Below are positions 3,061-64,000 of a DNA stretch of 64,000 nucleotides, one piece after another. The stretch is taken from contig NC_068998.1 of the NCBI RefSeq assembly GCF_001194135.2, positions 17,900,631 to 17,964,630 of the forward strand. The letters run 5' to 3'. Made by a program: the position numbers and the translations under genes. The stretch comes from Octopus bimaculoides (lineage: Eukaryota). Each line of letters begins with the position of its first letter. Positions within the stretch are counted from its first letter, which is position 1. The notes under the pieces were generated by a model. That model ran no database searches and had not been told where the DNA came from. It saw only the letters and a list, made by a program, of their open reading frames with translations.

Positions 3061-3191
3061 AAACCAACCTCAGAATTGATGGCTGCCATCCAACTGGGGA
3101 TTGGTCAAAGTGTTGGTGGACTCTCGTCCAAACCAGAGCGTGATGTACTCTTACAAGATTTTGCTGTGGTTGAAAGTGTATTTTTTCCAGG
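3061..3191 (+). CDS. PIP5K1: PIP5K1 exon: [44 protein letters not shown]
   Basis: ttttatttatag acceptor, GG|gtaag donor (phase 2). Matches the conserved N-terminal kinase segment AIQLGI...KPERDVL.QDF.VVES.FFP. Confidence 0.95.
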
Positions 3192-24600: not shown

Positions 24601-24785
24601 CCCATGCTTGCAAGGGTCGGACAGAATTTGTTGAGGTACATTTTTATGACTAAATGCTCTTTAGGTTGCCTTCATTCTTCTATTTCCAAGCAAAGTAGTG
24701 CTTTCCATGGCCAAACATGTTTTTCATGGAACAAGTACAATGAACCATATTGCTTTATGACAGTGATGTTGAGACAAAGACACAG

Positions 24786-24830
<45 letters not shown>

Positions 24831-33636: not shown

Positions 33637-34482
33637 TTAGATNNNNNNNNNNAAAGACTATCTTAAGGTTGAAATCATTGTATTTTCATATATATATATA
33701 TATATATATATCTTAAAAAATAGAGCTCAAAATCGATGCATTGAAGATACTTTATTGCAGCAACAATTATAATAGCAGAAACAACAACATATATATACAC
33801 GCGCACACATGCACACAAATTAATCTCCTGTATGCTAACCATTCTTGATATATGAAAATGTCTTCCTTGGTAGTCTATTCCACCTTTTTCCTGAAATGTA
33901 GGCTTATTACATTTAGCAGACGATAATCACTACACTCCATTGTTCTCATATCACTCGAGGAGGCTGACAAAGTGTTTCTTTCTCCACATGCTGTCATGAA
34001 TAAATTATGTTAAAAAAAAATTACAAAAAAAAAAAACAAAACAAAACAAAACAGAAAACTTTAAAACCTAATCTGGAAGTCAAAATTATCTATTTTTTTT
34101 TGTTTTTGTTCTTTTTTTTATTANNNNNNNNNNNNNNNNNNNNNNNNNNNNNNNNNNNNNNNNNNNNNNNNNNNNNNNNNNNNNNNNNNNNNNNNNNNNN
34201 NNNNNNNNNNNNNNNNNNNNNNNNNNNNNNNNNNNNNNNNNNNNNNNNNNNNNNNNNNNNNNNNNNNNNNNNNNNNNNNNNNNNNNNNNNNNNNNNNNNN
34301 NNNNNNNNNNNNNNNNNNNNNNNNNNNNNNNNNNNNNNNNNNNNNNNNNNNNNNNNNNNNNNNNNNNNNNNNNNNNNNNNNNNNNNNNNNNNNNNNNNNN
34401 NNNNNNNNNNNNNNNNNNNNNNNNNNNNNNNNNNNNNNNNNNNNNNNNNNNNNNNNNNNNNNNNNNNNNNNNNNNNNNNNNN

Positions 34483-40714: not shown

Positions 40715-43700
40715 GAAAAGTCCTTGTACGATTTGATTATTTGAAATTTAGACAAACTTTTCAAAAATAAAAAAAAAGGTAACATTTTTCATAGATAAAA
40801 GTATTAAAAGAGAAATATAGACAGACTTGTTTTGCTGCTGTTAATCTTCTGGGGTGGAGGAATGTCTGAAAATGTATTTTAACAAGATAAAGGGTATTAT
40901 TCTTATTATTCCCAAGCTGTAACTGAAATTTTCAAGCCTGAACTTCCGACCAATAACATCTTTGCAACAATTCCTATTGTTGATCTCCATCCCCTGAATC
41001 ATTATTTTACGGGAGATGTTTAACCCTTTAACATTTAAACCAGCGAAGTCTAGCCCAAATATGCCAGATCTAACCTCTTGCACCTACCCTAAAATGTCAT
41101 CCTAGAAATAAGCAATTGCACCATTCAAATCTTGAAGCTATAAGATAATGCACAATTTATTCAAAATGATGTCAATAAATAAACATTCCGTTTGACAGTA
41201 ATCTGAATGCTTAAAAGGTTAAATTCTTTTTCATTATTTTCTTTCTGATCTTTAATCTTGGAAATTCATATCTGATTTATGAGATCTAAAGGAGCTGTGA
41301 TGCTTCTTTCAAAATTTACTTGTTTGCTTTGCATTTGTTATATTCTAGACAGTAAAAGGGACATTAATACTTTGTAAGTTTCTTTTTTTCTTGTTCCCCA
41401 AAATAACTGTTTTAAGAATATATAGTGTTTCATTTGTATTTTAAACTGGGCATTATATTTTGAAAAAGCACTGTCTGTGTTTGAATAGCACTGTGTGTAT
41501 GTGTATTCGAATAGCACATTCTGTGTGTGTGTGTGTGTGTGTGTGTAGTGGCTGTCTGAATTATAACAATCTGTGTTTATTTAAGATTATCTCAAGATAT
41601 CAAATGATTAAATTTATTGGTGACAGCTTATTGTAATTTTTCAAAAATAAAAATGCATGTTTTACTTTATTTTATTTTTATATTATTGAACAGGTTTTGA
41701 ATGTTTTAAAACATTTTCAAAAGAAAGTGAGATTAAGTGAAACATTTAAAATATTTTGCACATGTTATCACTAACCTTAACTCTACTGATTTTAATCTAA
41801 CTTTATTGCTATAGAAGTAACTGATTTGTTACTTCAATCTGTAAAATATACTTAAGTAATTGCAATTATAACTACTCGATTTTTAATTGGTATATGCTTC
41901 CATTTATAATGATATCAGCAGATCCTCTGTGCATGCTTTCAAAGAGGTAAAATATTTGTTTTGTCATTGATAACTTGACAACAGTTTCTTTTTCCCTCTT
42001 CTTCTCTTGCTACTTGATTATGCATTTACAAAACAAAAAAAAAAAAAAAAAANNNNNNNNNNNNNNNNNNNNNNNNNNNNNNNNNNNNNNNNNNNNNNNN
42101 NNNNNNNNNNNNNNNNNNNNNNNNNNNNNNNNNNNNNNNNNNNNNNNNNNNNNNNNNNNNNNNNNNNNNNNNNNNNNNNNNNNNNNNNNNNNNNNNNNNN
42201 NNNNNNNNNNNNNNNNNNNNNNNNNNNNNNNNNNNNNNNNNNNNNNNNNNNNNNNNNNNNNNNNNNNNNNNNNNNNNNNNNNNNNNNNNNNNNNNNNNNN
42301 NNNNNNNNNNNNNNNNNNNNNNNNNNNNNNNNNNNNNNNNNNNNNNNNNNNNNNNNNNNNNNNNNNNNNNNNNNNNNNNNNNNNNNNNNNNNNNNNNNNN
42401 NNNNNNNNNNNNNNNNNNNNNNNNNNNNNNNNNNNNNNNNNNNNNNNNNNNNNNNNNNNNNNNNNNNNNNNNNNNNNNNNNNNNNNNNNNNNNNNNNNNN
42501 NNNNNNNNNNNNNNNNNNNNNNNNNNNNNNNNNNNNNNNNNNNNNNNNNNNNNNNNNNNNNNNNNNNNNNNNNNNNNNNNNNNNNNNNNNNNNNNNNNNN
42601 NNNNTATATATATATATATATTTGTATATATATATTTGTATATATATATATTGTACACAATTCAGTAGATTTACTGCTTAACAGCTCTATCACACAAACA
42701 TTAATATGTTAACTTGAAGCAACTAATACCAAATCAAATTAACCTTACTGATGCCTAATCTAGAAACCAACTGTGTAAACATGTTTATATTTAGACAAAA
42801 TAAAGTGTATAGATGTAAAAAAACAAAAATGCAACAAAAAATTAAGTATATGGAAGCAGATAAAATTTGAGTACCCAGTCCTACTTGTTCAGATTCTATC
42901 CATTATATTACCATAATTTTTTTTCATGTTTACCCATTATTCTATATTTATATATATTGCTTTGTTTAATTATAAAATATTTAGTTTAACACCTTTTAGT
43001 ACTTGATGTAAAACTTTGTATTAATATTCTCCATTGCATTGATATTTATGTTGTGGTGGATGGCAAAATTAGTATTGTTGTACAAAATGCTTTCTGTCAT
43101 TTAGTTATACTACTTTATGTTCTGAGTTCAAATCCTACCATGATTAACTTAGCCTTTCATCCTTCTGCGGGTTGATAAAGTACCAGTCAAGGACTTCGGT
43201 CGATGTAATTGACTAACTTCTTTCCTTACCGTAAATTTGGAGCTTATGCTTTTGTTAGAAATAATTATTAGTATTAGAGATCAATTTCACTGATCATCCC
43301 TCATTGGTCAATTAAATAAAGTGCCAGTTAAATATTAGAGTTGATATAATCAGCTGTTTCCCTCCTCTCAAAACTGCTGGCTTTGTGCCTAAAATTGGAA
43401 ACAATTATGTTCTGGGTTCAGTCCTGTTGTGTGGCACCCTGGGCAAGTGTCTTCTACTATAGCCTCAGGTCAACCAAAGACTTGTGCATGGATTTGATAA
43501 ACAGAAACTGAAGGAAGTCCAAATTTTTTGCTCTGTGCCTATTATTAAAAACAGTTATTTTGTGGGGGATTCAGACATGGCTGTGTGGTTAAGATGTTTG
43601 CTTCCCAAATGTAGTTCCACATCTAATCTTACTACCTGATACCTGGGCAAGTGTCTTATACTATAGCCTTGGGCTGACTAATGCCGTGTGAGTGAATTTG

Positions 43701-46700
43701 GCAGGTGAAAACTGAAAGAACCTCATCATAGATATATGTGTGTGTGTGTCTGATTGTCTCAATATTATGTGATAGTTGTAAACAGATGTCACCATTATAC
43801 AATCAGTATCATTCATTTTCAACCTTCCATGAAAATGTCTGACCATAGGGGAATATTATTTTGCTTGGAAACAGTTGGCAATAAGAAGAGCATCTTTCTA
43901 TAGAAAATCTTCCTCAACAAATTCCATTTGAACTAATTCAAGCATGGAAAAGTGGTTATTAAAGCAACTGTGATGGTAATAAATATTATTAACTAATTTC
44001 ATCATACTTTCATTATTGAGATACATTATAGTAAAATTTTTTCTTTTTAATTACTGTAAGACAGCAATATTACTTTTTAGTAATTGCCACATAATTACAG
44101 GTCCGTTAAACCATAACTTTTATTTTCCCCTTATGGTACGTTACAAAGAAAAAAAAAAAGAAAACAAAAACATATGAAGGCATTGGAGTTAGTAGTTTGT
44201 TGTAGTCTACATTGGCACTTGGCTTAGTGGTTAGAATATTCAGCTCACAATCCTTAGTTCGATTCCTTGCAGCACATTGTGTCTTTGAGCAAGGTGCTTT
44301 ATTTCACATTGCTCCAGTCCACTCACCTGGCAAAAATGAGTTTTACCTACAACTCAAAAGGCTGGCCTTTTGAATTCCGTGTCATGCTGAATTTCCCTGA
44401 GAACTACATGAAGAGTATGCATGTCTGTGGAGTGCTCTGCCGTTTGCACATTAATTTCATGAGCAGGCTGTTCTGTTGATTGGAGCAATTGGAATGCTCA
44501 TTGTCGTAACTGACAGAGTGCCAGTTACATTGGCTTATAGGATGCTGGGAAATGATGGCAGAATTAGTATATATCTGATGTATTAGATGAAATAGAGACT
44601 AATGTGCTTGTAGGTTTCAGACTTTCTAAAATCAGGTCTGTCTTGCCGAAAGTATTGTGAGTCATATTGCCCTATGAAAGACAGCTGCAGGCCATAGTAT
44701 AATCTGAAAGAAAATAACTGATTATAATTTCATCTTCACAATAATTCTCTTGGGCATTTAGACAATTAAGGGTAATGACTACTAAGAAATTTCTATTTTT
44801 AAATGTAAATTAAAAATAGAGTAGTTGATTCCCTTAGTTTTCTGATAAGTAAATATTATTCCTATATTCATTTAAGTTTCTCATGTGGTGATTCATTGCC
44901 CTGTTTGGTACAAGCCTGGTTGAAACAATGAAAGAATATTCTTGGGTCTTTCTATTTCACTTGTGATACTGTGATTGTTTTTCATCTTAAAAACATAAGT
45001 TATATAAATCTCAGATTGTATTTTGAGATGTCATTTCAATTTGGTTCTGTCATTCTCTTGCAGCCTTGAAGCATTCCCCTTCCAAAAAGAAGACTTCCAT
45101 AGCTGGCCGGCCACGTTTTCCTACAACCAGTGAACTTGCTGCTGATGCTGGACAGACCAGCAAGCAATCCGACAGAAACCAACGCACTATTAGCTTTTCA
45201 GATGAAAGTGGTAAAAAGTCTGGTAAGAGTTTGTATATCACTATTACTAACTACTATTATTTGTATTGTGATGGTGATGACTTCAATTGTTAAAACTCAT
45301 TTTCATGCATAGTTTATATGATTTCTTTCTTCCATATAGTACATGCACTCTGCAGTGTTTGGTTCATGTAAATAGACCACTAACTCTAGTTGTAAATTAA
45401 TACCTTTTTGCAGACATTTTGATGTCATTCTTGATGACTCGGAATTCCACATCTCAGTTTCAGTAGTTGGAGAGTCTTCTGAGATAGTTGACTGCAAGAT
45501 TAGCATCATATCCAGAGGGTGGATTTCTTTTTCAGCCATGTTACCATACAAAGCATTGAGCAAATCATCAATTACACAAATCCTTGTTTTTGTGTTGTGG
45601 TGTATGTATGGCCCAACCCTTTTGTTACCATATTTTCTTTGAAATACACAGTCTTTATTTTAAGTAATTTTGAAAATAATAAAGAATTTATTACAATAAC
45701 TTTGTTGTTATGAAGCTGGTGTTTGGAACATAAATTTGCATGAAATTCTGATGGAAGGTTTTAATTTAGATCATTTTAAAACAGGGAGTTTGTATCATAG
45801 AACCGGGCAGGTTGGTAAGGGTTAAAAATGACTCAGTAATGTTTGCTATCAATTCCTCTTCTGTTGCTACTGATTTTGTTTACTACTCAAGTCAGCTCTG
45901 ATTGAGTTGACATTGGATTTAAGTTATTCCAGATCTGATCATCTAATCCATTTTTTCATCAGACATAGTGTATCTAAAACTACATTCTCCAATGAGTTAA
46001 TAAGTTCTTCCCTGATCTTTTTAAAGATATGGCGTTATTTAAAGGAGATTTGACTATTATTTCTAGCAGATCAAGTCACTACATAGACACTTGTCTGTTG
46101 GCTGATATGTTGGCATTATTTCAGCTCTTTGCATTCGGTTAGTAATACATGTGATGATTCTGGTGCCTAGTTGTGTCAACCTAGGTTGATGGCCTTTCCC
46201 TTAAATAAAGATAAGTGACATAGAAAGACTTGCATGCATGGGTAACTGCTAGTCTTCCTCAAAAATCTTGTCCAGGCCTATATGTTCCTGAGCAGATGCA
46301 TGGTCAATGTTGACTGATGGAGGCCTTGTACATAGTGATGCTAACAGGATATGAATCATTAACCTTATTGTGATGGCTTACTGTGTTGTATTCATTCAGC
46401 TTTCCACAATTTCCAGCATAGGCATAACAATGTCGTAATAGTTGCACTTACAATATGCAAGTATGTACATTCACATCCTGTTTATGTTAATTGGAAATAT
46501 AAGGGTAGGGTTGTAACATTAATGAAGTCTCACACTAGTTGTCATCATCATCTTATGCTAGCATGGGTTGGATGGTTTGCCAGGAGCCAATGATCTAAAG
46601 GACTGCCCCAAACTCCAATGTCTGCTTTGGCATAATTTCTATGGCACCAACCTAACACCAACCACTTCACTGAGTGTACTGGATGCTTTCTATGTGACAC

Positions 46701-48191
46701 CGGCTCAAGTAAGGTCCCCCCAGAAACTCACAAGACAAGACCTCTCAACTTAGTGGGTGTAGTATTGAGGGAGGTAGCTTTATGCCAGGTGACAAGAGGT
46801 TAAACTGTGATAGAGGGACAGAAACAGATGCTGTAGAGGAAATACATGGCTACGCTAGTTGGAAATGGAAAGAAGATAGTGCAGAGGTGTCAGAGCATAT
46901 CCTCAAGTTACAGGAAAGTGAATATTAGAGAAATGGTCCAGAGGATTGGATAGGGTGAATGGGTACATAAGATAAGAGCATGAAAGGAGAGTGGCTGATG
47001 GATAGAAATGGAAATAGAAGTGTACCTGTTACTCCATAAACAAGAGGAGAATTTTGTTTGAATTAATTAATAGCAATATCATGCCAGTTTCTTTTAGCAA
47101 GGGTGACATATTAACTCCATACGATTGCTTTGATACAGGCTGGTATTCTTATTTTATCAGCTTAACAGGATTCTTATTGGGCTAATGTTATAAACATAAG
47201 ATCTTACTATTCAGTCACTTACTCAGCAATAATGTTGTTTAGTCCCAAGTCAATATCGATTGAATAGAATTATGATTAAAAGCTCTCCAGCTGTAACCAT
47301 CCCTTCTGTTGAAGTTTATATAGGTATGACTACAATATCTAATCTTTACTTTCCTTATTTAAGACAGCAGGGTGAGATTTTGAGTCAGATTCAATTGCTA
47401 TTTTTAGCAAGATGAGTGACTATGTAAAGGCTACCACCTCTGGCTTGTTGTTTTAAAATGCATTCATTCCTTCAATATTTTCTTCTTCATTATTGAACTT
47501 AATTTTTTTTTTTTCCTGCTGTTCACTAGCTTTGGGAGGCAGACCAGATATTGTACCTGAAAACCATGCCAGCTTATATGGTGAAAGGGATTCTTATCAT
47601 AGTGGAGAGTATACATATAACAAAGACGGCCAGAGGAAAATGAGATCTCTTGACTCTGGAAGATCTGGACTTACTGAACATGGGAAAAGGTGATTACTCT
47701 TTTCTTTTTAATTTTCTCCTTAATTGTTGTAAATTGAAGTGGCAAATGTTGGTGAATCCTGTAAATTTGTGTTTTTATTCTTTTGTGGAATTTGTTTGCA
47801 ATGTGAGATCAGACTGCAATTAATTTCGTGTTTGCTACTTCAGTAATTATTGTTGTATATACGTTGGATATGTCTGTTCATTTATTTGTTATTGATATAT
47901 TTTTAGTTAAGTGTGTTCTGATGTGTTCTTTCTCTCTTTTCCACTCTCTTCATCTTTCTTTTGCATACACAACTACACAGAAATATAAATTTATAGACTG
48001 TCCTGTAGTGTCAGTTCTACTTTGGGAAGTTAAATTAATCTATATACTGCTGCACATTTATTTATCTGTCATATTCCATGTTAGTGGTATTCAAGATTAT
48101 AAATACCCTAGTTTTGTCAGCATTGGTAGTTGGGGATCTATGTACTTTAGGCGCAAGGCCATTATCATTATTATTATCATCATCATCATCA

Positions 48192-48223
<32 letters not shown>

Positions 48224-48518
48224 TGTGTGATGATGTGAGAGAGAAAATAACATTTGATTAGATTATTACCAGTATATATTTTATTGACTTAGAAAGGATA
48301 AAATGTAAAGATGATCTTAGTGGATTTGTTAGCAACCTTCAAGTGTTGTGGAAAACAACCAATGAAAGAGAAGGTTTTTAGTATGAAGATTTTTGTTTTC
48401 TTTTTGTTGCATATTGTATGTGCTTCAGAAATCTTTCTAATTTCACCAAATTTAGGTTATTGTTGTTTTATAGCAGGTTTACTCTGATTGAGCAGACCTC
48501 TGATCAAAAGCAGTCCAG
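3061..48518 (+). CDS. PIP5K1: Type I PI4P 5-kinase (PIP5K1-like), multi-exon, 5'-partial, 3' end unresolved
   Basis: Exons 3061-3191, 10735-10852, 12666-12818, 13760-13819, 14143-14382, 18175-18267, 18730-18811, 24336-24450, 28110-28242, 30251-30338, 45064-45222, 47530-47689, 48477-48518 join in consistent phase with no stop. Translation has hallmark PIP5K motifs: AIQLGI, FKTYAP.AFRYFR, GASGS.F, IIKTV, MNNL, KYDLKGS, KDLDF, IMDYSLL, GIPA, IDILQSY, KKLEH, SV..P..Y..RF. Confidence 0.95.
3362..4118 (-). mobile_element. Internally deleted mariner element with paired TIRs
   Basis: 19-bp inverted repeat GAAAAGTTCATAGGCTGAC at 3368-3386 and its complement at 4086-4104, with TA at 4117-4118. Minus strand gives decayed transposase C-terminus ([35 protein letters not shown]). 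Confidence 0.85.
7875..9200 (-). mobile_element. Highly decayed pogo/Tigger-like DNA transposon
   Basis: Begins TA-CAGTAATTCCTTGGCTATC...GAAAATCCGCGAAGTAG, a Tigger-like terminus. Minus strand has only fragmentary DDE_1-like residues. Boundaries approximate. Confidence 0.45.
10735..10852 (+). CDS. PIP5K1: PIP5K1 exon: [39 protein letters not shown]
   Basis: cttttctttcag acceptor, ATG|gtaact donor. 118 nt, phase 2 to 0. Confidence 0.97.
11105..11500 (+). mobile_element. tRNA-derived SINE, family A (representative copy)
   Basis: Head TGTGGTTAA..GGTTCA(G/T)TC..GGCACCTTGGGCAAGTGTCTTCTACTATA, with internal (TG)n. Other copies approx: 7557-7695(-), 9335-9490(+), 25195-25330(-), 26887-27030(-), 27165-27500(+), 43405-43525(+), 43575-43985(+), 59265-59430(+), 60100-60560(+), 63475-63830(-). 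Confidence 0.85.
12666..12818 (+). CDS. PIP5K1: PIP5K1 exon: [51 protein letters not shown]
   Basis: ttctttgtag acceptor, CTG|gtttgt donor. 153 nt. G-loop GASGS and catalytic IIKTV. Confidence 0.97.
13760..13819 (+). CDS. PIP5K1: PIP5K1 exon: [20 protein letters not shown]
   Basis: tatttcag acceptor, CAA|gtgagt donor. 60 nt. Not in the ORF track because it is short. Confidence 0.96.
14143..14382 (+). CDS. PIP5K1: PIP5K1 exon: [16 protein letters not shown]...[14 protein letters not shown]...KDLDFL...IQRDCR
   Basis: ctctcttcag acceptor, CGG|gttagt donor. 240 nt. MNNL, DLKGS and KDLDF motifs. Confidence 0.97.
14607..14823. mobile_element. piggyBac-like MITE (TTAA-flanked)
   Basis: TTAA|CCCTTT...AAAGGG|TTAA. 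A related copy in opposite orientation lies at about 45617-45821. Confidence 0.7.
15139..16370. repeat. 42-bp minisatellite GTGAGGCCCAATGCTCAAAAGGAGCTCAGCCACTTTGCCACC
   Basis: Near-identical units at 15139, 15181, 15223, 15265 and at 16225, 16267, 16309, 16351, on either side of a 900-N gap. Confidence 0.95.
16590..16930 (-). mobile_element. RTE-clade LINE 3' fragment
   Basis: Minus strand reads [20 protein letters not shown]...[29 protein letters not shown], typical of the RTE ORF C-terminus. Confidence 0.85.
18175..18267 (+). CDS. PIP5K1: PIP5K1 exon: [31 protein letters not shown] (probable GC donor)
   Basis: tttctttacag acceptor and IMDYSLL catalytic motif. The 3' boundary is inferred at AAG|gcaagc (GC-AG), the phase-0 donor that fits the next exon. 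Confidence 0.85.
18730..18811 (+). CDS. PIP5K1: PIP5K1 kinase-insert exon: [27 protein letters not shown]
   Basis: tttgttgtactcag acceptor, AAAG|gtaaat donor. 82 nt, phase 0 to 1, which is needed to bring the 24336 exon into frame. Confidence 0.8.
18890..20290 (-). mobile_element. Old, fragmented RTE-like LINE
   Basis: catcatc-type tail and scattered RTE-like peptides on the minus strand. Heavily decayed, boundaries approximate. Confidence 0.4.
21075..21432 (+). mobile_element. Helentron-associated (HINE/DINE-like) non-autonomous element
   Basis: 5' AAGAGC...ACCTCCGCC subterminal motif (21096-21104) and 3' hairpin ACCTCCACCTT-cgtt-AAGGCAGAGGT (21401-21426). Family assignment is from recalled architecture only. 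Confidence 0.55.
22367..23580 (-). pseudogene. Decayed coding-like remnant of unknown origin (probably transposon-derived)
   Basis: About 109 minus-strand codons with one TGA ([47 protein letters not shown]...[19 protein letters not shown]...). Further broken peptide-like stretches upstream. Confidence 0.45.
24336..24450 (+). CDS. PIP5K1: PIP5K1 exon: [38 protein letters not shown]
   Basis: gttatttacag acceptor, CA|gtaagt donor. Contains the conserved YSTAME.IQ insert motif. Confidence 0.93.
24560..25175 (-). mobile_element. tRNA-derived SINE, family C
   Basis: Minus-strand head TGGCTCAGTGGTTAGAG..GATTCCC..TTGAGCAAGGCACTTTATTTCACATTGCTCCAGT. The same head occurs on + at about 44212-44340, with a different body. 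Confidence 0.7.
25690..25844. repeat. Compound (TATG)n/(TA)n/(TG)n microsatellite
   Basis: Seen directly. Many similar simple repeats elsewhere, e.g. 421-480, 641-740, 6068-6107, 31170-31234, 40430, 40675, 48170, 49450, 53580-53740, 55600-55900, 56500-56580, 59000-59210. Confidence 0.95.
25845..26869. mobile_element. ~1 kb TG..CA element inserted in (TA)n, containing an LTR-end/PBS junction
   Basis: Perfect 10-bp terminal inverted repeat TGTAGTGAAA / TTTCACTACA with TATA on both sides, and visibly CpG-richer than its flanks. Internal TGTAA (26399)...TTACA (26747) is followed by TGGTGACCCCGAC (26751-26763). Confidence 0.75.
27865..28025 (-). mobile_element. RTE/SINE 3'-tail repeat (CATCATCATCGTTTAACGTCCGCTTTCCATGCTAGCATGGG...)
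   Basis: Related copies approx at 11700-11950(+), 14880-15020(-), 46545-46900(-), 55380-55600(+). Confidence 0.7.
28110..28242 (+). CDS. PIP5K1: PIP5K1 exon: [45 protein letters not shown]
   Basis: gcattgcag acceptor, GGG|gtgagt donor. GGIPARN, IDILQSY and the activation-loop KKLEH. Confidence 0.97.
28660..29782 (-). mobile_element. Decayed mariner transposase
   Basis: ORF 28770-29375 has [21 protein letters not shown] and [21 protein letters not shown] mariner motifs. Central part deleted; 5' terminus abuts a LINE fragment. Confidence 0.92.
29785..30130 (-). mobile_element. RTE-like reverse transcriptase fragment
   Basis: Minus strand gives [10 protein letters not shown]...EWLVRAVQ..Y...LLFII.L...YADDLVL, with frameshifts and stops. 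Confidence 0.85.
30251..30338 (+). CDS. PIP5K1: PIP5K1 exon: [29 protein letters not shown]
   Basis: ttctttttag acceptor, C|gtaagt donor (phase 1). End of the kinase domain. Confidence 0.97.
37875..38085 (+). mobile_element. SINE family B (representative copy)
   Basis: GAGCTGGCAGAAT..GTTCAAATT..GGTCGACTTTGCCTTTCATCCTTT..GATAAAATAAGTACCAG. Other copies approx: 10385-10610(-), 20725-20940(+), 40205-40425(+), 40460-40675(+), 43070-43260(+), 49235-49445(-), 62420-62620(+), 62860-63075(+). Confidence 0.85.
38539..39208. repeat. ~670-bp palindrome (arms ~325 bp, 16-nt loop)
   Basis: 38539-38865 is the diverged reverse complement of 38882-39208; the loop is gttaactgtttattat. Confidence 0.95.
41024..41218. 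mobile_element. piggyBac-like MITE (TTAA-flanked), second family
   Basis: TTAA|CCCTTT...AAAAGG|TTAA. Confidence 0.55.
45064..45222 (+). CDS. PIP5K1: PIP5K1 tail exon: [19 protein letters not shown]...[10 protein letters not shown]
   Basis: cattctcttgcag acceptor, phase 1. PLKHSPSKK resembles the PLKPSPSKK-type segment after the vertebrate PIP5K1 kinase domain. Donors after 45210 (gtaaaa) and 45222 (gtaaga). Confidence 0.9.
47530..47689 (+). CDS. PIP5K1: PIP5K1 tail exon: [19 protein letters not shown]...GLTEHGK
   Basis: poly-T..gttcactag acceptor, AG|gtgatt donor, phase 1 to 2. GRPDIVP resembles the GRPDVLP/GRPDLLP tail motif of PIP5K1 proteins. Confidence 0.88.
48477..48518 (+). CDS. PIP5K1: Probable PIP5K1 tail exon: [14 protein letters not shown]
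   Basis: ttgttttatagcag NAGNAG acceptor, CAG|gtatga donor. 42 nt, phase 2 to 2, open in the expected frame. Confidence 0.7.
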
Positions 48519-49447
48519 GTATGAATATCTTGTTTTTTTAGAGATGTGTAGGACATCTAGGACTACATTATGTAGTGTATCTTATAAAGGTAGTAGGATG
48601 TGATGTAAGAGAAATTTAGCTGCTATTTTCTACTGGGTTAAGCAATAACATAGGGTTTCTATTGTTGGTTTGCTAAATTTAGGTTAAAATACAAGCTGTC
48701 AGTTTGTTTTTTTTTATTGATAAATTGCCCCGTTGCTTCTTTCTAGTTTATCTACCTATACTAAATAAATTACCAACTTTCTTAAACCTAAGTGAATTGC
48801 AATTTAATGAGTATAAGTAGCTTGCTGTTCTATTTTTAGTATTTTCCCATTTTGAATCACTGCACAATTGCATAAGTTTTGTGATTTATAAATCATGTTA
48901 TTGACAGAAATGTGCAACTACATAGAAAAACCTATTTCATACATTTAAAAAAAAAAAAACGAAAAATTTAAATTTAAAAATAAAAAATTCTTTTTTTTTT
49001 TTTTTTAATGCCTGCTTCAGTTTTAGTTGCATGTATAATTTTGTATTGTTTATTTTTGTGAAAAGTTCCACTTCCTGTATGACTCATTTTCTTGGATTGA
49101 TGTAAGTGTTTTTCTCACAAACTTGCTTTGAAACTCTTGCAGTCTACACTACAATTAAGTGCTTGTATTTCTCTCCTGTTTTCCCACGGCACAAGTAAAT
49201 GCAAAGATCCAGTTCAGTGGCATGATAGTGTTAATAATAATAATTCTTTCTACTGAAATTTTAAGTGGTGGTGGGGGGACTAGTTGATTACATCAACCTC
49301 AGTACTCGACTGGTACTTATTTGACCAACCCCGAAAAGATGAAAGGCAAAGTGGACCTTGGTGGAATTTGAACTCAGAACGTAAAGACAGATGAAATATC
49401 ACTAAACATTTTGTCTGGCATGTTAATGATTCTGCCAGCTCACTGCT

Positions 49448-53804: not shown

Positions 53805-53862
53805 GTACCTACAAAAGCACTATGAGTTGCAAAAGCTCATTCCGGTAAAATTATATACCTAA
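53805..53862 (+). CDS. Candidate PIP5K1 downstream exon: RYLQKHYELQKLIP(|VKLYT*)
   Basis: Strong acceptor ccactttttttag. Open in phase 2. Either spliced at CCG|gtaaaa (53844) or terminal at TAA 53860-53862. No homology support. Confidence 0.4.
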
Positions 53863-54688: not shown

Positions 54689-54772
54689 AGGAGATGGCTG
54701 CATCTGCTCGATGGTGAATGCACCGTCTCAGGTGAATTCTTTCTCTCGCTCATCTCCTAGGACACGTAAAAG
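54689..54772 (+). CDS. Candidate PIP5K1 downstream exon: RGDGCICSMVNAPSQ(VNSFSRSSPRTRK)
   Basis: ttttccttttacttgtag acceptor. GC-richer island, open in phase 2. Donors CAG|gtgaat (54731) and AAAAG|gtagta (54772). No homology support. Confidence 0.4.
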
Positions 54773-58273: not shown

Positions 58274-59744
58274 NNNNNNNNNNNNNNNNNNNNNNNNNNN
58301 NNNNNNNNNNNNNNNNNNNNNNNNNNNNNNNNNNNNNNNNNNNNNNNNNNNNNNNNNNNNNNNNNNNNNNNNNNNNNNNNNNNNNNNNNNNNNNNNNNNN
58401 NNNNNNNNNNNNNNNNNNNNNNNNNNNNNNNNNNNNNNNNNNNNNNNNNNNNNNNNNNNNNNNNNNNNNNNNNNNNNNNNNNNNNNNNNNNNNNNNNNNN
58501 NNNNNNNNNNNNNNNNNNNNNNNNNNNNNNNNNNNNNNNNNNNNNNNNNNNNNNNNNNNNNNNNNNNNNNNNNNNNNNNNNNNNNNNNNNNNNNNNNNNN
58601 NNNNNNNNNNNNNNNNNNNNNNNNNNNNNNNNNNNNNNNNNNNNNNNNNNNNNNNNNNNNNNNNNNNNNNNNNNNNNNNNNNNNNNNNNNNNNNNNNNNN
58701 NNATATATAAAATAAACTTGAATCTTGTTAAGCAGTAGGATATATTTTTAAAATTGGTATTAAACTGAACCTTCATAGCATTTATGAACAGGGATTTTAC
58801 ATGTTTTAATATCAACCCCTTTTCCCCTTTTATGCTGGCATGTAATGGCTAAGCTAGTTTTTATTACCATATTCCATATATCTGTTTGCTAGCTGAATTC
58901 TTTCATACTCTGTTGTTAACCATTCTAATTGTTGCATGTTTACATTACTAGAATCTCTTTTCTCATAGGAAGCTGGTGGAACTGATATCCTTATGTATCC
59001 TTAATATTCAGTTTCTCTCTCTCTCTTTTATTCCTCTCTTACTTTCTTCCTTCTCTCTTTTTCCTTTAATCTCCCTTCTACTCTCTCTCTCTCTCCCCTC
59101 TATCTATCTCTGTTTCTCTCTCCTCTCTTTCTCTCTCCTCTCTTTCTCTCTCCCTCTCTCCATCTATCTCTTTCTCCCCCCCCCTCTCTCATACGCACAC
59201 ACACACACAGACTTGATCAGAAATATATCCTACTATATTTCACTCAGGTTTATCCTATATAAGTGCCCAATTATGTGGTTAAGAAGTTTGTTTTGCAGTC
59301 ATGTGGTTTTGCGTTTTATTCCACTATATGACATCTTGGGCAAGTATCTTCTACCACAGTTCACATCAACTTATGCTTTGTGGAATTTGGTAAACGAAAA
59401 TGGTGTGGAAGCTTGCCAGAAGAATTGTCACTCTTCTTGGATGCTACATATAATCTTTTGACTGATTCAACATCACCATCTGGCCTGTAGCTGCCTTGAC
59501 GAGACTGTATTCTTATAGAAGCATTGGAGCTAAGTTTTGAGTCTGAGGATCATTTCCTTCCACCTGTCTCAGAATCATGGTTGCTATCTTTCCTCTAACT
59601 AAAGTTATGAAAAAACAATACAGAATTGGCTGCTCCATTTACAGTTTGAGTTCATTGGGTTATATTTCTCGTGTATAAAGCTTTAAGAAAATGTATTCTA
59701 GAACATATCTGCTTCCTGTTTGTGCTTATGTGAACTTGTTTCAG

Positions 59745-59782
59745 GAAGAGTACATTGGAATGGTTTCTTTTTGCTTCTCCAG
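59745..59782 (+). CDS. Candidate duplicated 38-nt exon, copy A
   Basis: ttgtttcag|GAAGAGTACATTGGAATGGTTTCTTTTTGCTTCTCCAG|gtaagc. 31/38 identical to copy B. Confidence 0.5.
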
Positions 59783-60301
59783 GTAAGCACAGAGGCTAAA
59801 ATTAAAAAGGCAGGAGGAAATATTATGCAATTATCAAACATATTTGTTATGGAAGTAAAGTGAAATAGTTAAAATTGAGAATTAAAATTGGTTAATGATA
59901 CTAATTAAGCCTGCAAATAGAATTTTCTATTCTGTAACAATTAAATGACAAAAATGGAAAATCTTGTGAAGATTGGCTCATGACAGGGCCAATCAATCTA
60001 TGGTAGTATTTAGAGAAACCACTGAGAGGAAGATTGGTTGGTTTTGTGAAATGAAAACTAAGTAAAGGTGGTCCATTTTGATCAACTAATAATAATAAAC
60101 GTGGGCATAGATGTGACTCTGTGATTAAGAAGTTTTCTTCCCAATCACATGGTTTCAGTTTCAGTCCCACTACATGGCACTTTGGGCAAGTGCCTCCAAA
60201 TATAGCCCTGGATTGACCAAAACCTTGTGAGTGGATTTGGTGGACAGAAACTGAAAGAAGTCTGTGATGCACATGCAAGTGTGTGTGTATGTGTGCGTGC
60301 G

Positions 60302-60334
<33 letters not shown>

Positions 60335-60820
60335 CTTTGTTTTGATAGTGTGTCATAGTTGTAAATGGGTGTCACTGTCATATAAGCAGTGCTGTTCATT
60401 TCCAGTATTCTGTGGAAACCTGTCTCATGATGGAGGAAATATTACTTTACTTGGCAACTGTTGAGGGTTGGCCACAAGAAGGGCATCTGGCCATAGAAAA
60501 TCTGCCTCAATAAACTCTGACCCAAGCATACATGGAAAAGTGAATGTAAAATAGTGATGGAATTCAGTCTGCATAGTCACAAAAAAAAAAAAAATGTTCA
60601 ATTATGAAATAAGGGCAGTCATTTGTGAAAACTCTCACTAAATCACTACAAAGAAACTACTTGGGAAATACTGGTAAACATATTGACAGTCATACAAGAT
60701 TCACTAGCTTCAAAAGTTTTAGAAACCATAATATGAAGAAGAATGCACTGTTCCAAGTCCATCCAACCCTGCTTGCATGAAGAAAAAGGATGTGAAACCA
60801 ATAGTGATAAGATGTTTCAG

Positions 60821-60858
60821 GGAGGGTACATAGGAATGGTATTCTGTTGCTTCTCCAG
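60821..60858 (+). CDS. Candidate duplicated 38-nt exon, copy B
   Basis: gatgtttcag|GGAGGGTACATAGGAATGGTATTCTGTTGCTTCTCCAG|gtaagc. Same length and splice signals as copy A. Confidence 0.5.
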
Positions 60859-63800
60859 GTAAGCATGAAGTTAATGTTATTCATTTCTCATGAGTATTAG
60901 TTGTATAACTGACTTTTATATTAATTCTCAATTCAAAATGAAGTGAAATAGCTTCAGTTTTTTTTATGAAGGCAGTCTTTGGGGTGCTTATAGCATGAGG
61001 CGCCAAATGTAAGCCGTGTAAAATTAGTTCTGTGCAAAATCTAGCTTCTTATAAGTCACACAGTCAAATAACGGTAAGTGAACTAATTAATCAGATGAAA
61101 TGATTGATGATTGTTGTAGCAATGGTGTCTATTATTAGTCAAACTCAGATTTCAAAGAGCAGGAACAAACACCTGACGCTTCAATTATTGCAAATTCGTT
61201 GTGTTAATGAAAGGATACTCATTATGAGTACTAGACGTTTTGGCACAGCCATTTTGGGCCCTCCTATTTGGTGTTGTTGTTTCAATGCTGATTTATTTGA
61301 TATCAAGCATTTTTAATGTTTCTCTTGTTCATCCCTCACTCTCTCTAAAATGTGCTGTTGCCAAAACAGGCTCAACATTCAGTCAGCCATGCCAGATCAC
61401 CAGCACCAAAACAACTACATCCAATCATCTCATTCTGACCTTCTATAATTGCTGCTAAGAACGATTGATGAGTTTAATTTTAAGTAGAAATATTTGGTTT
61501 ATATGTACAGAAAACTGATTTTCATAGGATTCTTTTAAAAAACCTTTCTTTTTACTTTCTCCAAGTTAGTAGGGTGTGTACAAATTTTAATGTTTTTATA
61601 AAATATTTAAAAGGCAGTAGTCTACCATTCCTCCAGACAATATTATATTTCTATTGCTATATTTAATAGGAAAAACTGGAAGTCTGTTTCTGAGATATTT
61701 CCTCTTCTTTTTCTTTTCCTTTTCCCTCTCTTCAACTCTAGTTTCTAAGTCTGTTAGCTATGGTCAGCATCTCAAGTTATATTTTAAATCTTAGTTTATT
61801 CATTATCATTGTCATAACCATCCTAATCAGCATCATAGGAAGCATAGTGTTTTATATGATAGGAGCATATTTCTGGTGTACATATAGGATATTTATCCTG
61901 TATTATCTATTTTGGCAAATTATTTTCTAATGTTATGTCTTCAAGTATTCATAACCAACTTGTGGGGTGGAAGGCAATATTAATATTTTGTTTTTCAGAT
62001 TTAACAAACCGTTATAGCAATAATATGGGTTAGGTTAGGTAGAATAAAAATAATTTAACCAAAAACCAAAAATGGGAGCTGGTGGATACTTTTTGAAACA
62101 GAATATCAAATTACTAAAAGCTTCAGGAGTTAATGAATGTTAATGTTTTCAAAAGATATATAGGACTCTGAGACTTAACTACTTTTTTTTTCTGTTAAAC
62201 AGATCCATGATCAGTTATGATATAGATTTGAAACTGAAAATAATTGCTACAGATTTTTTTTGTCAATTTGAGTAATCTGATTGGAATTGTTTTGATTTTT
62301 TAGATCTGTCTGGATCTATGCCAATAATAGGAAGTATCTATTTATAACCATCATCACCATGGTTATTGTTGTTGTTAATGTTATTACTGTTGTTGTTGTT
62401 GTTGTTATTATTATTATTATGGCAAACTGGCTGAATTGTTAGCATGCCATGCAAAATGATTAGTGGCATTTTGCCTGTTTTTACATTTTGAGTTCAAATT
62501 CCTCTGAGTCAACTTTGCCTTTCATCCTTTCAGGGTCATTGAAATAAGTTCCACTTGAACAGTGGGGTCGATGTAATCAACTTATCCCCTCCCCCCAAAT
62601 TGCTGGCCTTGTGCCAAAATTATTATTATTACTATTTTTATTAAGACTATTTTTGAGCAAAACATTTCATCTCACATTGCTCTGCAATCACTTCAACACC
62701 TGACATGTGTTGCACTGTGCACCTGTTCAGGCAATGTTATTTTGATCAAGCGAGTGAGCTTAATGTGCAGCACATACATTTGATCTTTATAAACAAATCA
62801 CTTGTGCTGGTTATTCAGCAAAAGCTGATCATCCCATACTTTTGTCCATCATCAAGACAGTGAGCTGGCAGAATCGTTAGTGTTTCAGGAAGACCCCAAG
62901 AAATGCTTGACAGAATTTTTTCTGGCTCTTTCTGTTCTGAGTTTAAATTCTGTTGAGGTTGACTCTGCCTTTCATCCTTTTGGGGTCACTAAAATAAGTA
63001 TCAATTGAGCACTGGGGACAATATAAGCAATTGAATCCCTCTCATAAGAAGAAATTTTCAGGCCTTGTGCCTATAGTAGAAAGAATTATTGTTAATCATT
63101 ATTATTGTTGTTTATCTCTAAACTGCCCTGATCATAAACATTGACATTCCATAAGTTTACATAAGCTTTCATAAATACTTTGATTGAAAGCTGAAATTTT
63201 TATCAATAAAATTAAGACATTCTTGAGGGTTTAAAAAACCATGTCTTCCCTATTTAAGGGATGCACAATTATTCTCCCACCCCCCTTGTCATCTTCAGCA
63301 ACTGGATAAATACTTTTATGAAAAATGTCGAAGTTTGCTGTTTGGAGATGGATAAGTCATGTGAATCTGCCTTGATAGACATGGTAGTGGTGATGCTAAA
63401 GCTGTTGTCTTTGAAATTTTGCTTCTCCTGAAGCTAAAACATGAAGTTATATTTTTTACATCTTTTGTTTCGGTCATCAGACTGCAGCCATGCTGGGGCA
63501 CCACCTTGAAGAATTTTAGTTGAACTTATCAACCCCAGTACTTAATTTTTTGTAAAACCTGGTGCTTATTCTATCAGTTTCTTTTGCTGAATCACTAGGT
63601 TACACGGCTGTAAACATAACAACACCAGTTGTCAAGTAGTGGTGGGGGACGAACACAAAAGCACACACACATGATAGGCTTTTATCAGTTTCCATCTACC
63701 AAATCCTCTCACAAGGCTTTGGTTGTCCTGAGGCTATAGTAGAAGACACTTGCCCAAGGTGCCACACAGTGGGACTGAATCTGGAGCCATGTAGTTGGGA

Positions 63801-64000
63801 AGCAAACTTCTTACCACACAGCCATGCCTGCATCTACTTGAAGATTTTTTTTTTTTCTTGTTGAGAATTATAACAAATGTGTTGGTGTTAACTCTGATGC
63901 TATGGTGCAACATGGCAGTAATGCAGAAAACAATAAAACTACTATAAACAATGACAACAGTGGCACTTCCAACAACACTTTCAACAGTAGAAACAACAAC

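What the first reader, a model, noticed from the sequence alone, without database searches (positions are those of the whole stretch)
59745..60858. Two paralogous 38-nt candidate exons with identical splice signals (possible mutually exclusive pair or recursive splice sites)
Seen: two 38-nt segments 1,076 bp apart, 31/38 identical, each bounded by tttcag| and |gtaagc. Similarity stops at the splice signals, as expected if only exon and splice sites are under selection. Frame 0 gives EEYIGMVSFCFS vs GGYIGMVFCCFS. The phase-1 frame gives (G)RVHWNGFFLLLQ vs (G)RVHRNGILLLLQ. The phase-2 frame is open in A but hits TAG in B. Inference: 38 is not a multiple of 3, so including both would shift the frame, which favours mutually exclusive use. 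One phase-consistent path is 48518 > 53805-53844 (or 54689-54731) > A or B > 61999, ending ...FS-RFNKPL*. That would give swappable Cys-containing C-termini that could be acylation sites. Each copy also ends in a pyrimidine tract + AG|GTAAG, the signature of a recursive (ratchet) splice site.
Basis: partly seen in the sequence, partly recalled or inferred. Interest (0 to 1): 0.72.

Follow-up and report, generated by a model that had tools for sequence, protein, structure and literature searches.

The report
Duplicated cryptic splice module in PIP5K1
Two copies of a short sequence with very strong back-to-back splice signals lie in a long intron of the octopus PIP5K1 lipid-kinase gene; the copies are real and look selectively kept, but they are not protein-coding alternative exons and most resemble recursive ("ratchet") splice sites, which only RNA data can confirm.

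Summary
A (59745-59782) and B (60821-60858) are 31/38 identical. They share TGTTTCAG upstream and GTAAGCA downstream, giving a 53-nt block with 46 matches. There are only two copies in the window.

The window is Octopus bimaculoides. The + strand carries a type I PIP5K gene whose C-terminal tail exons are heavily alternatively spliced. A and B lie in the intron after the 84-nt cassette exon 54689-54772.

None of 24 annotated isoforms from four octopods contains A or B in any frame. In the annotated phase A shifts the frame and B gives a stop. The productive mRNAs skip both, so this is not a mutually exclusive coding pair.

The invariant part is a pyrimidine tract plus CAG|GTAAGCA. Its donor scores above all 14 real donors of the gene that were scored. 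B's upstream acceptor has almost no pyrimidine tract.

A second shared island (AAGTGAAATAG) lies 76/83 nt downstream, at matching positions in the two copies, with random sequence in between. This points to an old duplication with two retained islands. That anatomy matches a ratchet point, a cryptic recursive-splicing (RS) exon and a weak downstream donor.

Function is untested: I could obtain no RNA data and no orthologous DNA.

The parts
59737..59789 (+). Module A, conserved core (53 nt): TGTTTCAG + 38 nt + GTAAGCA. It contains a tandem acceptor|donor at 59782|59783.
   Evidence: 46/53 identical to module B. Pyrimidines at -20..-4 of the internal AG: 15/17. Donor score 8.2.
59745..59782 (+).
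   Evidence: Upstream acceptor has 11/17 pyrimidines. Shifts the frame in the annotated phase.
60813..60865 (+). Module B, conserved core (53 nt). Tandem acceptor|donor at 60858|60859.
   Evidence: Pyrimidine tract of the internal AG 13/17. Donor score 8.2.
60821..60858 (+).
   Evidence: Upstream acceptor has 7/17 pyrimidines, below all 16 real acceptors. TAG stop in the annotated phase.
59858..59868 (+). Second conserved island of copy A (AAGTGAAATAG). It contains a weak donor-like AAA|GTGAAA at 59860, which would close a 77-nt cryptic RS-exon (59783-59859).
60941..60951 (+). Second conserved island of copy B (AAGTGAAATAG). It contains a weak donor-like GAA|GTGAAA at 60943, which would close an 84-nt cryptic RS-exon (60859-60942).
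60103..60590 (+). SINE copy with an internal (GT)n, lying between A and B. It is 19-21% diverged from the consensus of the other window copies and serves as a rough clock.
60737..60812 (+). Probable decayed SINE 3' tail that ends where the A/B homology begins. It replaces the pyrimidine tract of B's upstream acceptor.
   Evidence: alignment score at the 99th percentile of window segments. Not significant with nhmmer.
54689..54772 (+). Annotated 84-nt cassette exon of PIP5K1 (GDGCICSMVNAPSQVNSFSRSSPRTRK). It is the last annotated exon upstream of A and B, and its donor leaves phase 2.
53805..53862 (+). Annotated alternative terminal exon (YLQKHYELQKLIPVKLYT-stop; O. sinensis isoforms X6/X7).
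49066..49101 (+). Annotated 36-nt microexon (S-STSCMTHFLGL-I). It has no similarity to A or B.
47530..47689 (+). Constitutive tail exon ending ...GLTEHGK. Its donor leaves phase 2.
58274..58702 (.). Assembly gap (429 N) in the same intron, flanked on both sides by TA-rich simple sequence.
   Evidence: It is the only place in the window where the next exon (SDMVSN...DVLD) could hide. The TA-rich flanks suggest an unresolved microsatellite instead.

Best explanation
A and B are two copies of an intronic splice-signal module. They arose by an old local duplication of at least about 135 nt inside a long intron of the Octopus bimaculoides type I PIP5K gene, on the transcribed strand. They are not coding exons.

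Each module has two conserved islands separated by about 70 nt that has decayed to random.

- Island 1 is a pyrimidine tract followed by CAG|GTAAGCA. This is an acceptor placed directly against a very strong donor.
- Island 2 lies 76-83 nt downstream and contains a weak donor-like A|GTGAAA.

This is the anatomy of a recursive splice site: a ratchet point, a short cryptic RS-exon and a weaker RS-exon donor.

Proposed mechanism (inferred, not shown):
1. The upstream exon (donor 47689, 49101 or 54772) is first joined to the AG at 59782 or 60858.
2. That junction recreates a strong donor, AAG|GTAAGC from donors 47689 and 54772 (GAT|GTAAGC from the microexon).
3. The recreated donor is then spliced to the next exon beyond the window, so nothing is left in the mRNA.

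What is shown: the paralogy, the motif strength, the island pattern, the host gene and phases, and the absence from annotated mRNAs. What is inferred: actual use by the spliceosome.
For: - Host gene and position. PF01504 PIP5K exons lie on the + strand and match O. bimaculoides isoforms exactly. The next exon (SDMVSN...) is absent from the window, so the intron runs past 64000. The gene spans 276 kb in O. vulgaris and 128 kb in Argonauta.
- The invariant part is signal, not codons. All 7 differences lie in positions 2-26 of the 38 nt. The last 12 nt (TTGCTTCTCCAG) and GTAAGCA are identical.
- Donor strength. AG|GTAAGC scores 8.2, above all 14 donors of the gene that were scored (maximum 7.3), and in the top 0.1% of 3350 GT sites.
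- Acceptor strength. The pyrimidine tract before the internal AG is 15/17 (A) and 13/17 (B), typical of real acceptors.
- Rarity of the motif. Of 343 AGGT sites on both strands, only A, B and one weak site (10094) combine donor score >=3 with a pyrimidine tract >=12/17.
- Second island at matching positions. The exact 11-mer at +76/+83 is reached by 3/3000 shuffles and 4/2733 controls. The sequence in between is random: 48.1% identical columns vs 48.2% in controls. Core 46/53 vs spacer 37/77 gives Fisher P = 6e-6.
- Rough clock. The SINE between the copies is 19-21% diverged from its consensus. If it inserted after the duplication, neutral A-B identity should be about 0.65-0.72. Observed 46/53 has P of about 0.0003-0.004.
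- Invisible in mRNA. None of 24 annotated isoforms contains A or B. Ratchet points leave no trace in mRNA, have conserved acceptor|donor motifs, poorly conserved out-of-frame RS-exons, and an RP donor stronger than the RS-exon donor (PMC8605326; 10.1101/006163).
- Consequence of the cryptic exon. Including the RS-exon would give ...R-stop (AG|G TAA), which fits a unit that must be removed (the sequence shows this directly).
Against: - There is no RNA evidence of any kind: no junction reads, lariats or sawtooth coverage.
- There is no cross-species comparison. Orthologous DNA could not be obtained because the gene ranges are too long for retrieval.
- Two ratchet points only 1,076 nt apart would be unusual. 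The shortest recursively removed segment reported in Drosophila is about 2.6 kb.
- Positions -6/-5 are C,T rather than the TT seen in 99.5% of Drosophila ratchet points. That rule may be specific to flies.
- The candidate RS-exon donor is weak (score -1.6, 83rd percentile of GT sites).
- Conservation extends 46 nt upstream of the AG, into a purine-rich stretch that no splice signal obviously needs.
- The selection argument rests on a 53-nt block, one 11-mer and a SINE clock. The clock assumes the SINE arrived after the duplication.
- The full intron length in this species is unknown beyond 9.2 kb.
Confidence: 0.4

Rival explanations
1. Neutral local duplication that is never used by the spliceosome. 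A short patch of intron that happened to contain splice-like motifs was copied nearby. The copy could be a target-site duplication (TSD) of a roughly 1-kb retroelement insertion whose tail abuts B, or a templated repair patch. Both copies are then inert pseudo-exons.
For: - A probable SINE-type 3' tail (60737-60812) ends exactly where the homology begins at B, as expected for a right-hand target-site duplication.
- The flanks show no similarity upstream, and only borderline gapped similarity in the first 100 nt downstream (P about 0.04).
- No annotated isoform uses A or B.
- Pseudo-exons are common in long introns (general knowledge).
Against: - The 11-mer at matching positions +76/+83 (about 1 in 1000 by chance) should not exist outside a 53-nt TSD or patch.
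- A 53-nt TSD is unusually long.
- The 5' part of the putative inserted element is not repeated anywhere in the window.
- The SINE nested between the copies is about 20% diverged, older than 13% A-B divergence allows under neutrality (P about 0.003).
- A random 53-nt patch would rarely carry the strongest donor in 64 kb next to a good pyrimidine tract.
- The tail assignment is not significant with nhmmer.
Confidence: 0.27
2. Unannotated frame-breaking cassette exons (poison or truncating exons). The 38-nt units 59745-59782 and/or 60821-60858 are occasionally included. A shifts the frame. B gives ...TRKR-EGT-stop. The result is a transcript targeted by nonsense-mediated decay (NMD), or a kinase lacking the distal C-terminal tail.
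For: - Each unit has TTTCAG| and |GTAAGC, and the homology includes both signals.
- 38 nt is not a multiple of 3, and B has an in-phase TAG.
- This part of the gene is a hotspot of alternative splicing: a 36-nt microexon, an 84-nt cassette and an alternative terminal exon.
- Automated annotation tends to omit NMD isoforms (general knowledge).
Against: - B's upstream acceptor has 7/17 pyrimidines, below all 16 real acceptors. A's has 11/17, at the low end.
- The differences between A and B cluster in the 5' part of the 'exon', while the pyrimidine-rich 3' end is invariant. That fits an acceptor tract better than an exon body.
- No isoform with such an ending appears among 24 annotated proteins of four species.
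Confidence: 0.2
3. One reading: a mutually exclusive pair of coding exons that gives alternative Cys-containing C-termini (...EEYIGMVSFCFS-RFNKPL vs ...GGYIGMVFCCFS-RFNKPL).
For: - The two units have equal length and are adjacent and similar, as for exon pairs born by tandem duplication.
- Frames 0 and 2 are open in both copies.
- A path through 53805-53844 and 61999 is phase-consistent.
Against: - The path requires a donor inside an annotated terminal exon and an unannotated acceptor.
- In the phase left by every annotated upstream donor, B has a stop and A shifts the frame.
- Annotated productive mRNAs skip both, which a non-3n mutually exclusive pair cannot tolerate.
- The 7 differences show no third-position bias in any frame.
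- No isoform carries these peptides.
- B's acceptor is poor.
Confidence: 0.04
4. Fragment of a dispersed, high-copy repeat of the octopus genome that happens to carry splice-like motifs.
For: - The surrounding intron is full of old SINE copies.
- B abuts a probable SINE tail.
Against: - There are only two copies in 64 kb, against at least 10 copies of the SINE.
- The block is not part of the SINE profile.
- The minus-strand ORF (open reading frame) over B has no relatives among 1.84 billion representative proteins. That test is weak.
- No exact match to the degenerate motif was found in metagenome contigs.
- Copies of a repeat would be similar throughout, not in two islands.
Confidence: 0.06

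Closest known systems
Drosophila intronic ratchet points with cryptic RS-exons (Ubx, kuz, Bx; Burnette 2005, Duff 2015, Joseph 2018/2021)
   Same: - Tandem acceptor|donor with a prominent pyrimidine tract and a strong regenerated donor.
- A short unit (here 77/84 nt) closed by a weaker donor.
- Poorly conserved body that is out of frame or contains a stop.
- Location in a long intron and no trace in annotated mRNA.
   Different: - Use is not demonstrated here.
- Two copies lie only about 1 kb apart.
- -6/-5 is CT, not TT.
- Conservation is inferred from paralogues rather than from orthologues.
- The host is a cephalopod. A full-text search returned only one paper containing both 'recursive splicing' and 'cephalopod', each once, and I did not open it.
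Vertebrate RS-exons in long neuronal genes (Sibley 2015; Blazquez 2018)
   Same: A recursive site is defined through an RS-exon, and competition between the regenerated donor and the RS-exon donor decides inclusion (as summarised in PMC8605326).
   Different: Most vertebrate RS-exons are expressed, annotated exons. Here nothing is annotated.
Mutually exclusive exon pairs born by tandem exon duplication (for example SCN alpha exons 5a/5b, SNAP25 5a/5b, C. elegans clusters)
   Same: Adjacent, equal-length, sequence-similar units with diverged flanks.
   Different: - One and only one exon must be included.
- For non-3n exons, skipping both breaks the frame (PMC6071210 abstract; PMC4165533).
- Here the productive mRNAs skip both, and one copy has an in-phase stop.
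Poison (NMD-coupled) cassette exons
   Same: A unit whose length is not a multiple of 3, or that contains a stop, flanked by good splice signals.
   Different: Inclusion has not been observed. B's acceptor is poor. No RNA-binding-protein autoregulation logic is evident for a lipid kinase.
Alternative C-terminal splice variants of mammalian PIP5K1C (PIPKI-gamma isoforms; my own knowledge, not checked here)
   Same: The host gene's C-terminal tail is diversified by cassette and alternative terminal exons. This is also seen in the octopus isoforms.
   Different: A and B are not among the annotated tail exons and encode no conserved peptide.

Membership tests
Recursive splice site (ratchet point + RS-exon) | Acceptor directly juxtaposed to a donor (YnNCAG|GTRAGT) with a prominent pyrimidine tract | tested here: met
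   TTTCTTTTTGCTTCTCCAG|GTAAGCA (A) and TATTCTGTTGCTTCTCCAG|GTAAGCA (B). Pyrimidine tract 15/17 and 13/17. Donor score 8.2, top 0.1%.
Recursive splice site (ratchet point + RS-exon) | TT at positions -6/-5 of the acceptor (99.5% of Drosophila ratchet points) | tested here: not met
   Both copies have C,T at -6,-5. The rule was described for Drosophila only.
Recursive splice site (ratchet point + RS-exon) | Short cryptic RS-exon closed by a downstream donor weaker than the regenerated donor | tested here: inconclusive
   A|GTGAAA lies at +77 (A) and +84 (B) inside a conserved 11-mer, but its donor score is only -1.6.
Recursive splice site (ratchet point + RS-exon) | Lies in a long intron of the host gene, on the transcribed strand | tested here: met
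   + strand, in the intron after 54772, which runs past 64000 (more than 9.2 kb). The gene spans 276 kb in O. vulgaris. The full intron length is unknown.
Recursive splice site (ratchet point + RS-exon) | Acceptor|donor motif much better conserved than its flanks | tested here: inconclusive
   Met between the two paralogues (46/53 vs 37/77, P = 6e-6). Orthologous sequences could not be retrieved.
Recursive splice site (ratchet point + RS-exon) | Exon-to-ratchet-point junction reads, recursive lariats and sawtooth read density in total RNA | not testable with these tools
   No RNA-seq data were available.
Mutually exclusive exon pair | Adjacent exons of the same length with sequence similarity | tested here: met
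   38 nt each, 31/38 identical, 1,038-nt spacer.
Mutually exclusive exon pair | Both copies open in the reading phase set by the flanking exons | tested here: not met
   All annotated upstream donors leave phase 2. In that phase B reads EGT-stop.
Mutually exclusive exon pair | One and only one copy is present in every productive mRNA | tested here: not met
   24 annotated isoforms of four species contain neither copy. Transcript-level data were not available.
Mutually exclusive exon pair | Functional acceptor and donor at both copies | tested here: inconclusive
   The donors are excellent. A's acceptor is at the low end (11/17 pyrimidines). B's acceptor is below all real ones (7/17).
Poison (NMD-coupled) cassette exon | Inclusion introduces a frameshift or premature stop | tested here: met
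   38 nt. A shifts the frame and B gives TAG in phase.
Poison (NMD-coupled) cassette exon | Inclusion isoform detectable and stabilised when NMD is blocked | not testable with these tools
   No RNA data.
Dispersed repeat / transposable-element fragment | Many copies in the genome, similar along their whole length | tested here: not met
   Two copies in 64 kb; the block is not part of the SINE profile; similarity is confined to two islands. A whole-genome count was not possible.
Structured non-coding RNA (snoRNA, miRNA and similar) | Match to a known family or an unusually stable, conserved fold | tested here: not met
   No Rfam match with E < 0.1 in 59000-62200. Fold z-scores are -0.06 (A) and -1.7 (B), and the two structures differ.

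The most novel reading that the evidence does not exclude
Both copies are selectively maintained recursive splice sites, each with a cryptic RS-exon, that help remove a very long intron in the alternatively spliced C-terminal region of octopus PIP5K1. This could be an early documented case of recursive splicing in a cephalopod or lophotrochozoan. A full-text search returned only one paper containing both 'recursive splicing' and 'cephalopod', each once, and I did not open it. The paralogous pair would also show how ratchet points can multiply by local duplication.
Probability: 0.3. Interest if true: 0.65.

Novelty: new member of a known kind. Interest (0 to 1): 0.4.

Why it matters
Cephalopod genes have very long introns, and how these are removed accurately is little studied. 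Recursive splicing is established in flies and vertebrates.

If these sites are used, they would extend recursive splicing to another major animal lineage. They would also give a tractable example in a gene whose C-terminal isoforms are known in mammals to direct the kinase to different cellular sites (my own knowledge).

If they are not used, the case is still a useful caution. Equal length, similarity and perfect splice consensus are not enough to call mutually exclusive exons. Phase, annotated isoforms and acceptor quality must also agree.

Tried and rejected
1. **Orthologous DNA.** The look-up of encoding contigs located the gene in O. vulgaris (276 kb) and Argonauta hians (128 kb) but returned no DNA because the ranges are too long. 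Other isoforms are not on record.
2. **Contigs through ORFs that cross A or B.** Four ORFs, on both strands, are not on record.
3. **Repeat or orthologue search by protein.** The 64-aa minus-strand ORF over B, searched against 1.84 billion representatives, gave one spurious hit to a repetitive 1820-aa protein.
4. **Metagenome scan.** An exact scan for the degenerate 39-nt motif found 0 hits. This was expected to be uninformative.
5. **Paralogy with the annotated microexon.** A and B show no similarity to the 36-nt microexon 49066-49101.
6. **Structured RNA.** No Rfam match and no conserved fold.
7. **Larger tandem duplication.** There is no residual similarity upstream, or more than 100 nt downstream.
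8. **Long target-site duplication of a retroelement.** I considered this seriously because a SINE-like tail abuts B. I marked it down because of the second island at matching positions and the age of the nested SINE. It is kept as part of the neutral rival.
9. **Next exon hidden in the N gap 58274-58702.** This is unlikely because both gap edges are TA microsatellite. If it were true, A and B would be read as G-RVHWNGFFLLLQ and G-RVHRNGILLLLQ, and would still shift the frame of every annotated downstream exon.
10. **Remaining isoforms.** 24 of the 39 members of the main isoform cluster could not be listed. The tool shows 15, and the same 15 on a second call.
Full report
**Observation**

They are 31/38 identical. 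Each is preceded by TTTCAG and followed by GTAAGC. The identical flanks are 8 nt upstream (TGTTTCAG) and 7 nt downstream (GTAAGCA), so the homologous block is 53 nt with 46 matches.

Without gaps, the next 100 nt on each side are at background level (31% and 35%). A degenerate 39-nt pattern with up to three mismatches finds only these two sites, and none in shuffles. A profile built from A and B finds no third copy in the window. The pair is therefore homologous and not a chance match. The quoted translations are correct.

**Context**

The window is a gapped draft assembly of an octopus genome. The + strand carries a type I phosphatidylinositol-4-phosphate 5-kinase gene (Pfam PF01504). The exon peptides match Octopus bimaculoides RefSeq isoforms exactly ([27 protein letters not shown]).

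Exons in the window run from 3061 to 54772. The C-terminal tail is heavily alternatively spliced:

- a constitutive exon at 47530-47689;
- a 36-nt microexon at 49066-49101;
- an alternative terminal exon at 53805-53862 (YLQKHYELQKLIPVKLYT-stop, in O. sinensis X6/X7);
- an 84-nt cassette at 54689-54772.

The next exon of all long isoforms (SDMVSNASSSP...) is not in the window. The only place it could hide is the 429-N gap at 58274-58702. Both edges of that gap are TA microsatellite, so it is probably an unresolved simple repeat. A and B therefore lie inside an intron that starts at 54773 and runs past 64000. The whole gene spans 276 kb in O. vulgaris and 128 kb in Argonauta hians.

**Test of the mutually exclusive exon reading**

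All three annotated upstream donors leave phase 2. In that phase A reads (R)KSTLEWFLFASP and leaves one extra nucleotide, while B reads (R)EGT-stop.

None of 24 annotated isoforms contains any 5-residue word of any frame of A or B. These comprise O. bimaculoides X3, X5-X8, X10 and X11, O. sinensis X2-X7, ten O. vulgaris models and Argonauta X3. The productive mRNAs therefore skip both units. For exons whose length is not a multiple of three, skipping all copies breaks the frame just as double inclusion does (PMC4165533). By definition, one and only one exon of a mutually exclusive cluster is included (PMC6071210 abstract). Both criteria fail.

- a donor at 48518;
- a donor at 53844, inside an annotated terminal exon;
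- an acceptor at 61999.

The seven differences between A and B show no third-position bias in any frame. They all lie in positions 2-26, while the last 12 nt and the donor are invariant. B's upstream acceptor has 7 pyrimidines in -20..-4. All 16 real acceptors of the gene have 10-17, and A has 11. The stretch just upstream of B looks like a decayed SINE 3' tail, though nhmmer does not support this.

**What is conserved**

The invariant core is a pyrimidine tract followed by CAG|GTAAGCA. That is an acceptor placed directly against a donor.

- The pyrimidine tract before this AG is 15/17 in A and 13/17 in B.
- With a generic 5' splice-site matrix (frequencies from my own knowledge), the donor scores 8.2. 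This is above all 14 donors of the gene that were scored (maximum 7.3) and in the top 0.1% of 3350 GT sites.
- Of 343 AGGT sites on both strands, only A, B and one weak site at 10094 combine donor score >=3 with a pyrimidine tract >=12/17.

**A second island**

The 11-mer AAGTGAAATAG occurs exactly twice in the window, 76 and 83 nt after the two AG|GT junctions (59858 and 60941). A shared exact run of this length at such similar offsets was reached in 3 of 3000 shuffles and 4 of 2733 real-sequence controls.

The 68-75 nt between the core and the 11-mer is at random level (48.1% identical columns vs 48.2% in controls). So is the 100 nt after it. Core versus spacer gives 46/53 against 37/77 (Fisher P = 6e-6), with the caveat that the core boundaries were chosen after seeing the data.

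The simplest reading is an old duplication of at least about 135 nt in which two islands were retained while the rest decayed to saturation.

A rough clock agrees. The SINE copy between A and B (60103-60590) is 19-21% diverged from a leave-one-out consensus of the other window copies. If it arrived after the duplication, neutral A-B identity should be about 0.65-0.72. Observing 46/53 then has P of about 0.0003-0.004.

**Mechanism proposed**

The layout is:

1. a tandem acceptor|donor with a strong regenerated donor;
2. a unit of about 80 nt that is poorly conserved and opens with a stop (AG|G TAA in the annotated phase);
3. a conserved element containing a weak donor-like A|GTGAAA (score -1.6).

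This matches descriptions of Drosophila ratchet points with cryptic RS-exons. Those have highly conserved acceptor|donor motifs, poorly conserved and usually out-of-frame exon bodies, and an RP donor stronger than the RS-exon donor. They lie in long introns and leave no trace in mRNA (PMC8605326 introduction; 10.1101/006163).

On this reading the upstream exon is first spliced to 59783 or 60859. The junction AAG|GTAAGC (GAT|GTAAGC from the microexon) then acts as a donor to the next exon. This explains why no annotated isoform contains A or B.

Points that do not fit:

- the two sites are only 1,076 nt apart;
- -6/-5 is CT, not the TT of fly ratchet points;
- the RS-exon donor is weak;
- conservation reaches 46 nt upstream of the AG.

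Actual use is not shown. I put this reading at 0.4.

**Rivals**

- *Neutral duplication, including a long target-site duplication of a roughly 1-kb retroelement whose tail abuts B (0.27).* It explains the sharp left boundary at B. It does not explain the second island at matching positions, the age of the nested SINE, or the exceptional motif strength.
- *Frame-breaking (poison or truncating) 38-nt cassette exons (0.2).* This fits the two splice signals and the splicing hotspot. It is weakened by B's poor acceptor and by where the differences fall.
- *Coding mutually exclusive exons (0.04).* See the test above.
- *Dispersed repeat (0.06).* There are only two copies in 64 kb, against at least 10 SINE copies. 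The block is not part of the SINE profile. The ORF over B has no relatives among 1.84 billion representative proteins, although that test has low power.
- *Structured RNA.* Excluded as far as Rfam and folding can tell.

**Limits**

I could obtain no RNA-seq, no orthologous DNA and no whole-genome copy count. The gene ranges are too long for retrieval, and ORFs over A and B are not on record. A metagenome scan was empty, as expected. Twenty-four members of the main isoform cluster could not be listed. The case for selection rests on paralogue comparison within one 64-kb window.

**Verdict**

If true, it would be a new member of a known kind in a lineage where, as far as my search went, it is little documented: one paper contains both terms, and I did not open it.

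Noticed in passing
window 30339-30362 (intron after exon 30251-30338): Reading through the donor at 30338|30339 gives ...[12 protein letters not shown]-stop. The same C-terminus ends two Logan transcript-derived proteins that are 82-87% identical (P0121, P0122; possibly from other cephalopods) and O. vulgaris isoform X11 (P0366). A short isoform that ends just after the kinase core, made by intron read-through, therefore appears conserved.
   Followed up: partly
window 48474-48518 (+): A 45-nt candidate microexon (ttttatag|CAGGTT...GTCCAG|gtatga) is open and frame-preserving in the annotated phase ([16 protein letters not shown]). It lies between exon 47530-47689 and the 36-nt microexon, and is absent from all 24 isoforms seen.
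   Followed up: partly
window 18268 (donor of exon 18175-18267): The intron after ...KEKEK appears to be a GC-AG intron (AAG|GCAAGC ... ctcag|GCAGTT). This follows from the exact protein match on both sides.
   Followed up: no
window 28773-29492 (-): A 240-aa open frame of a mariner/Tc1-type transposase (Pfam PF01359 Transposase_1, E = 1.3e-10, plus a helix-turn-helix) lies in the intron between the two last kinase-core exons. The neighbouring open frame 29519-29929 (-) has no Pfam match.
   Followed up: partly
window, at least 10 sites (e.g. 7507-7699, 9343-9528, 11131-11483, 24578-24830, 27177-27491, 43573-43963, 59274-59402, 60103-60590, 63649-63824): An old SINE family with an internal (GT)n microsatellite. 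Copies are 63-76% identical to one another and 8-33% diverged from a window consensus.
   Followed up: partly
window 10094 (+), intron between exons 3061-3193 and 10735-10852: This is the only other AG|GT site in the window that combines a fair donor (score 3.5) with a pyrimidine tract of 12/17. I did not examine it further.
   Followed up: no
window N runs (6108-7007, 15312-16211, 34124-34482, 42053-42604, 58274-58702 and others): Several assembly gaps are flanked by simple repeats: (GT)n at 6108, a 36-nt tandem repeat encoding [12 protein letters not shown] at 15312, and (TA)n at 34124, 42053 and 58274. They are probably unresolved repeats rather than missing unique sequence.
   Followed up: no
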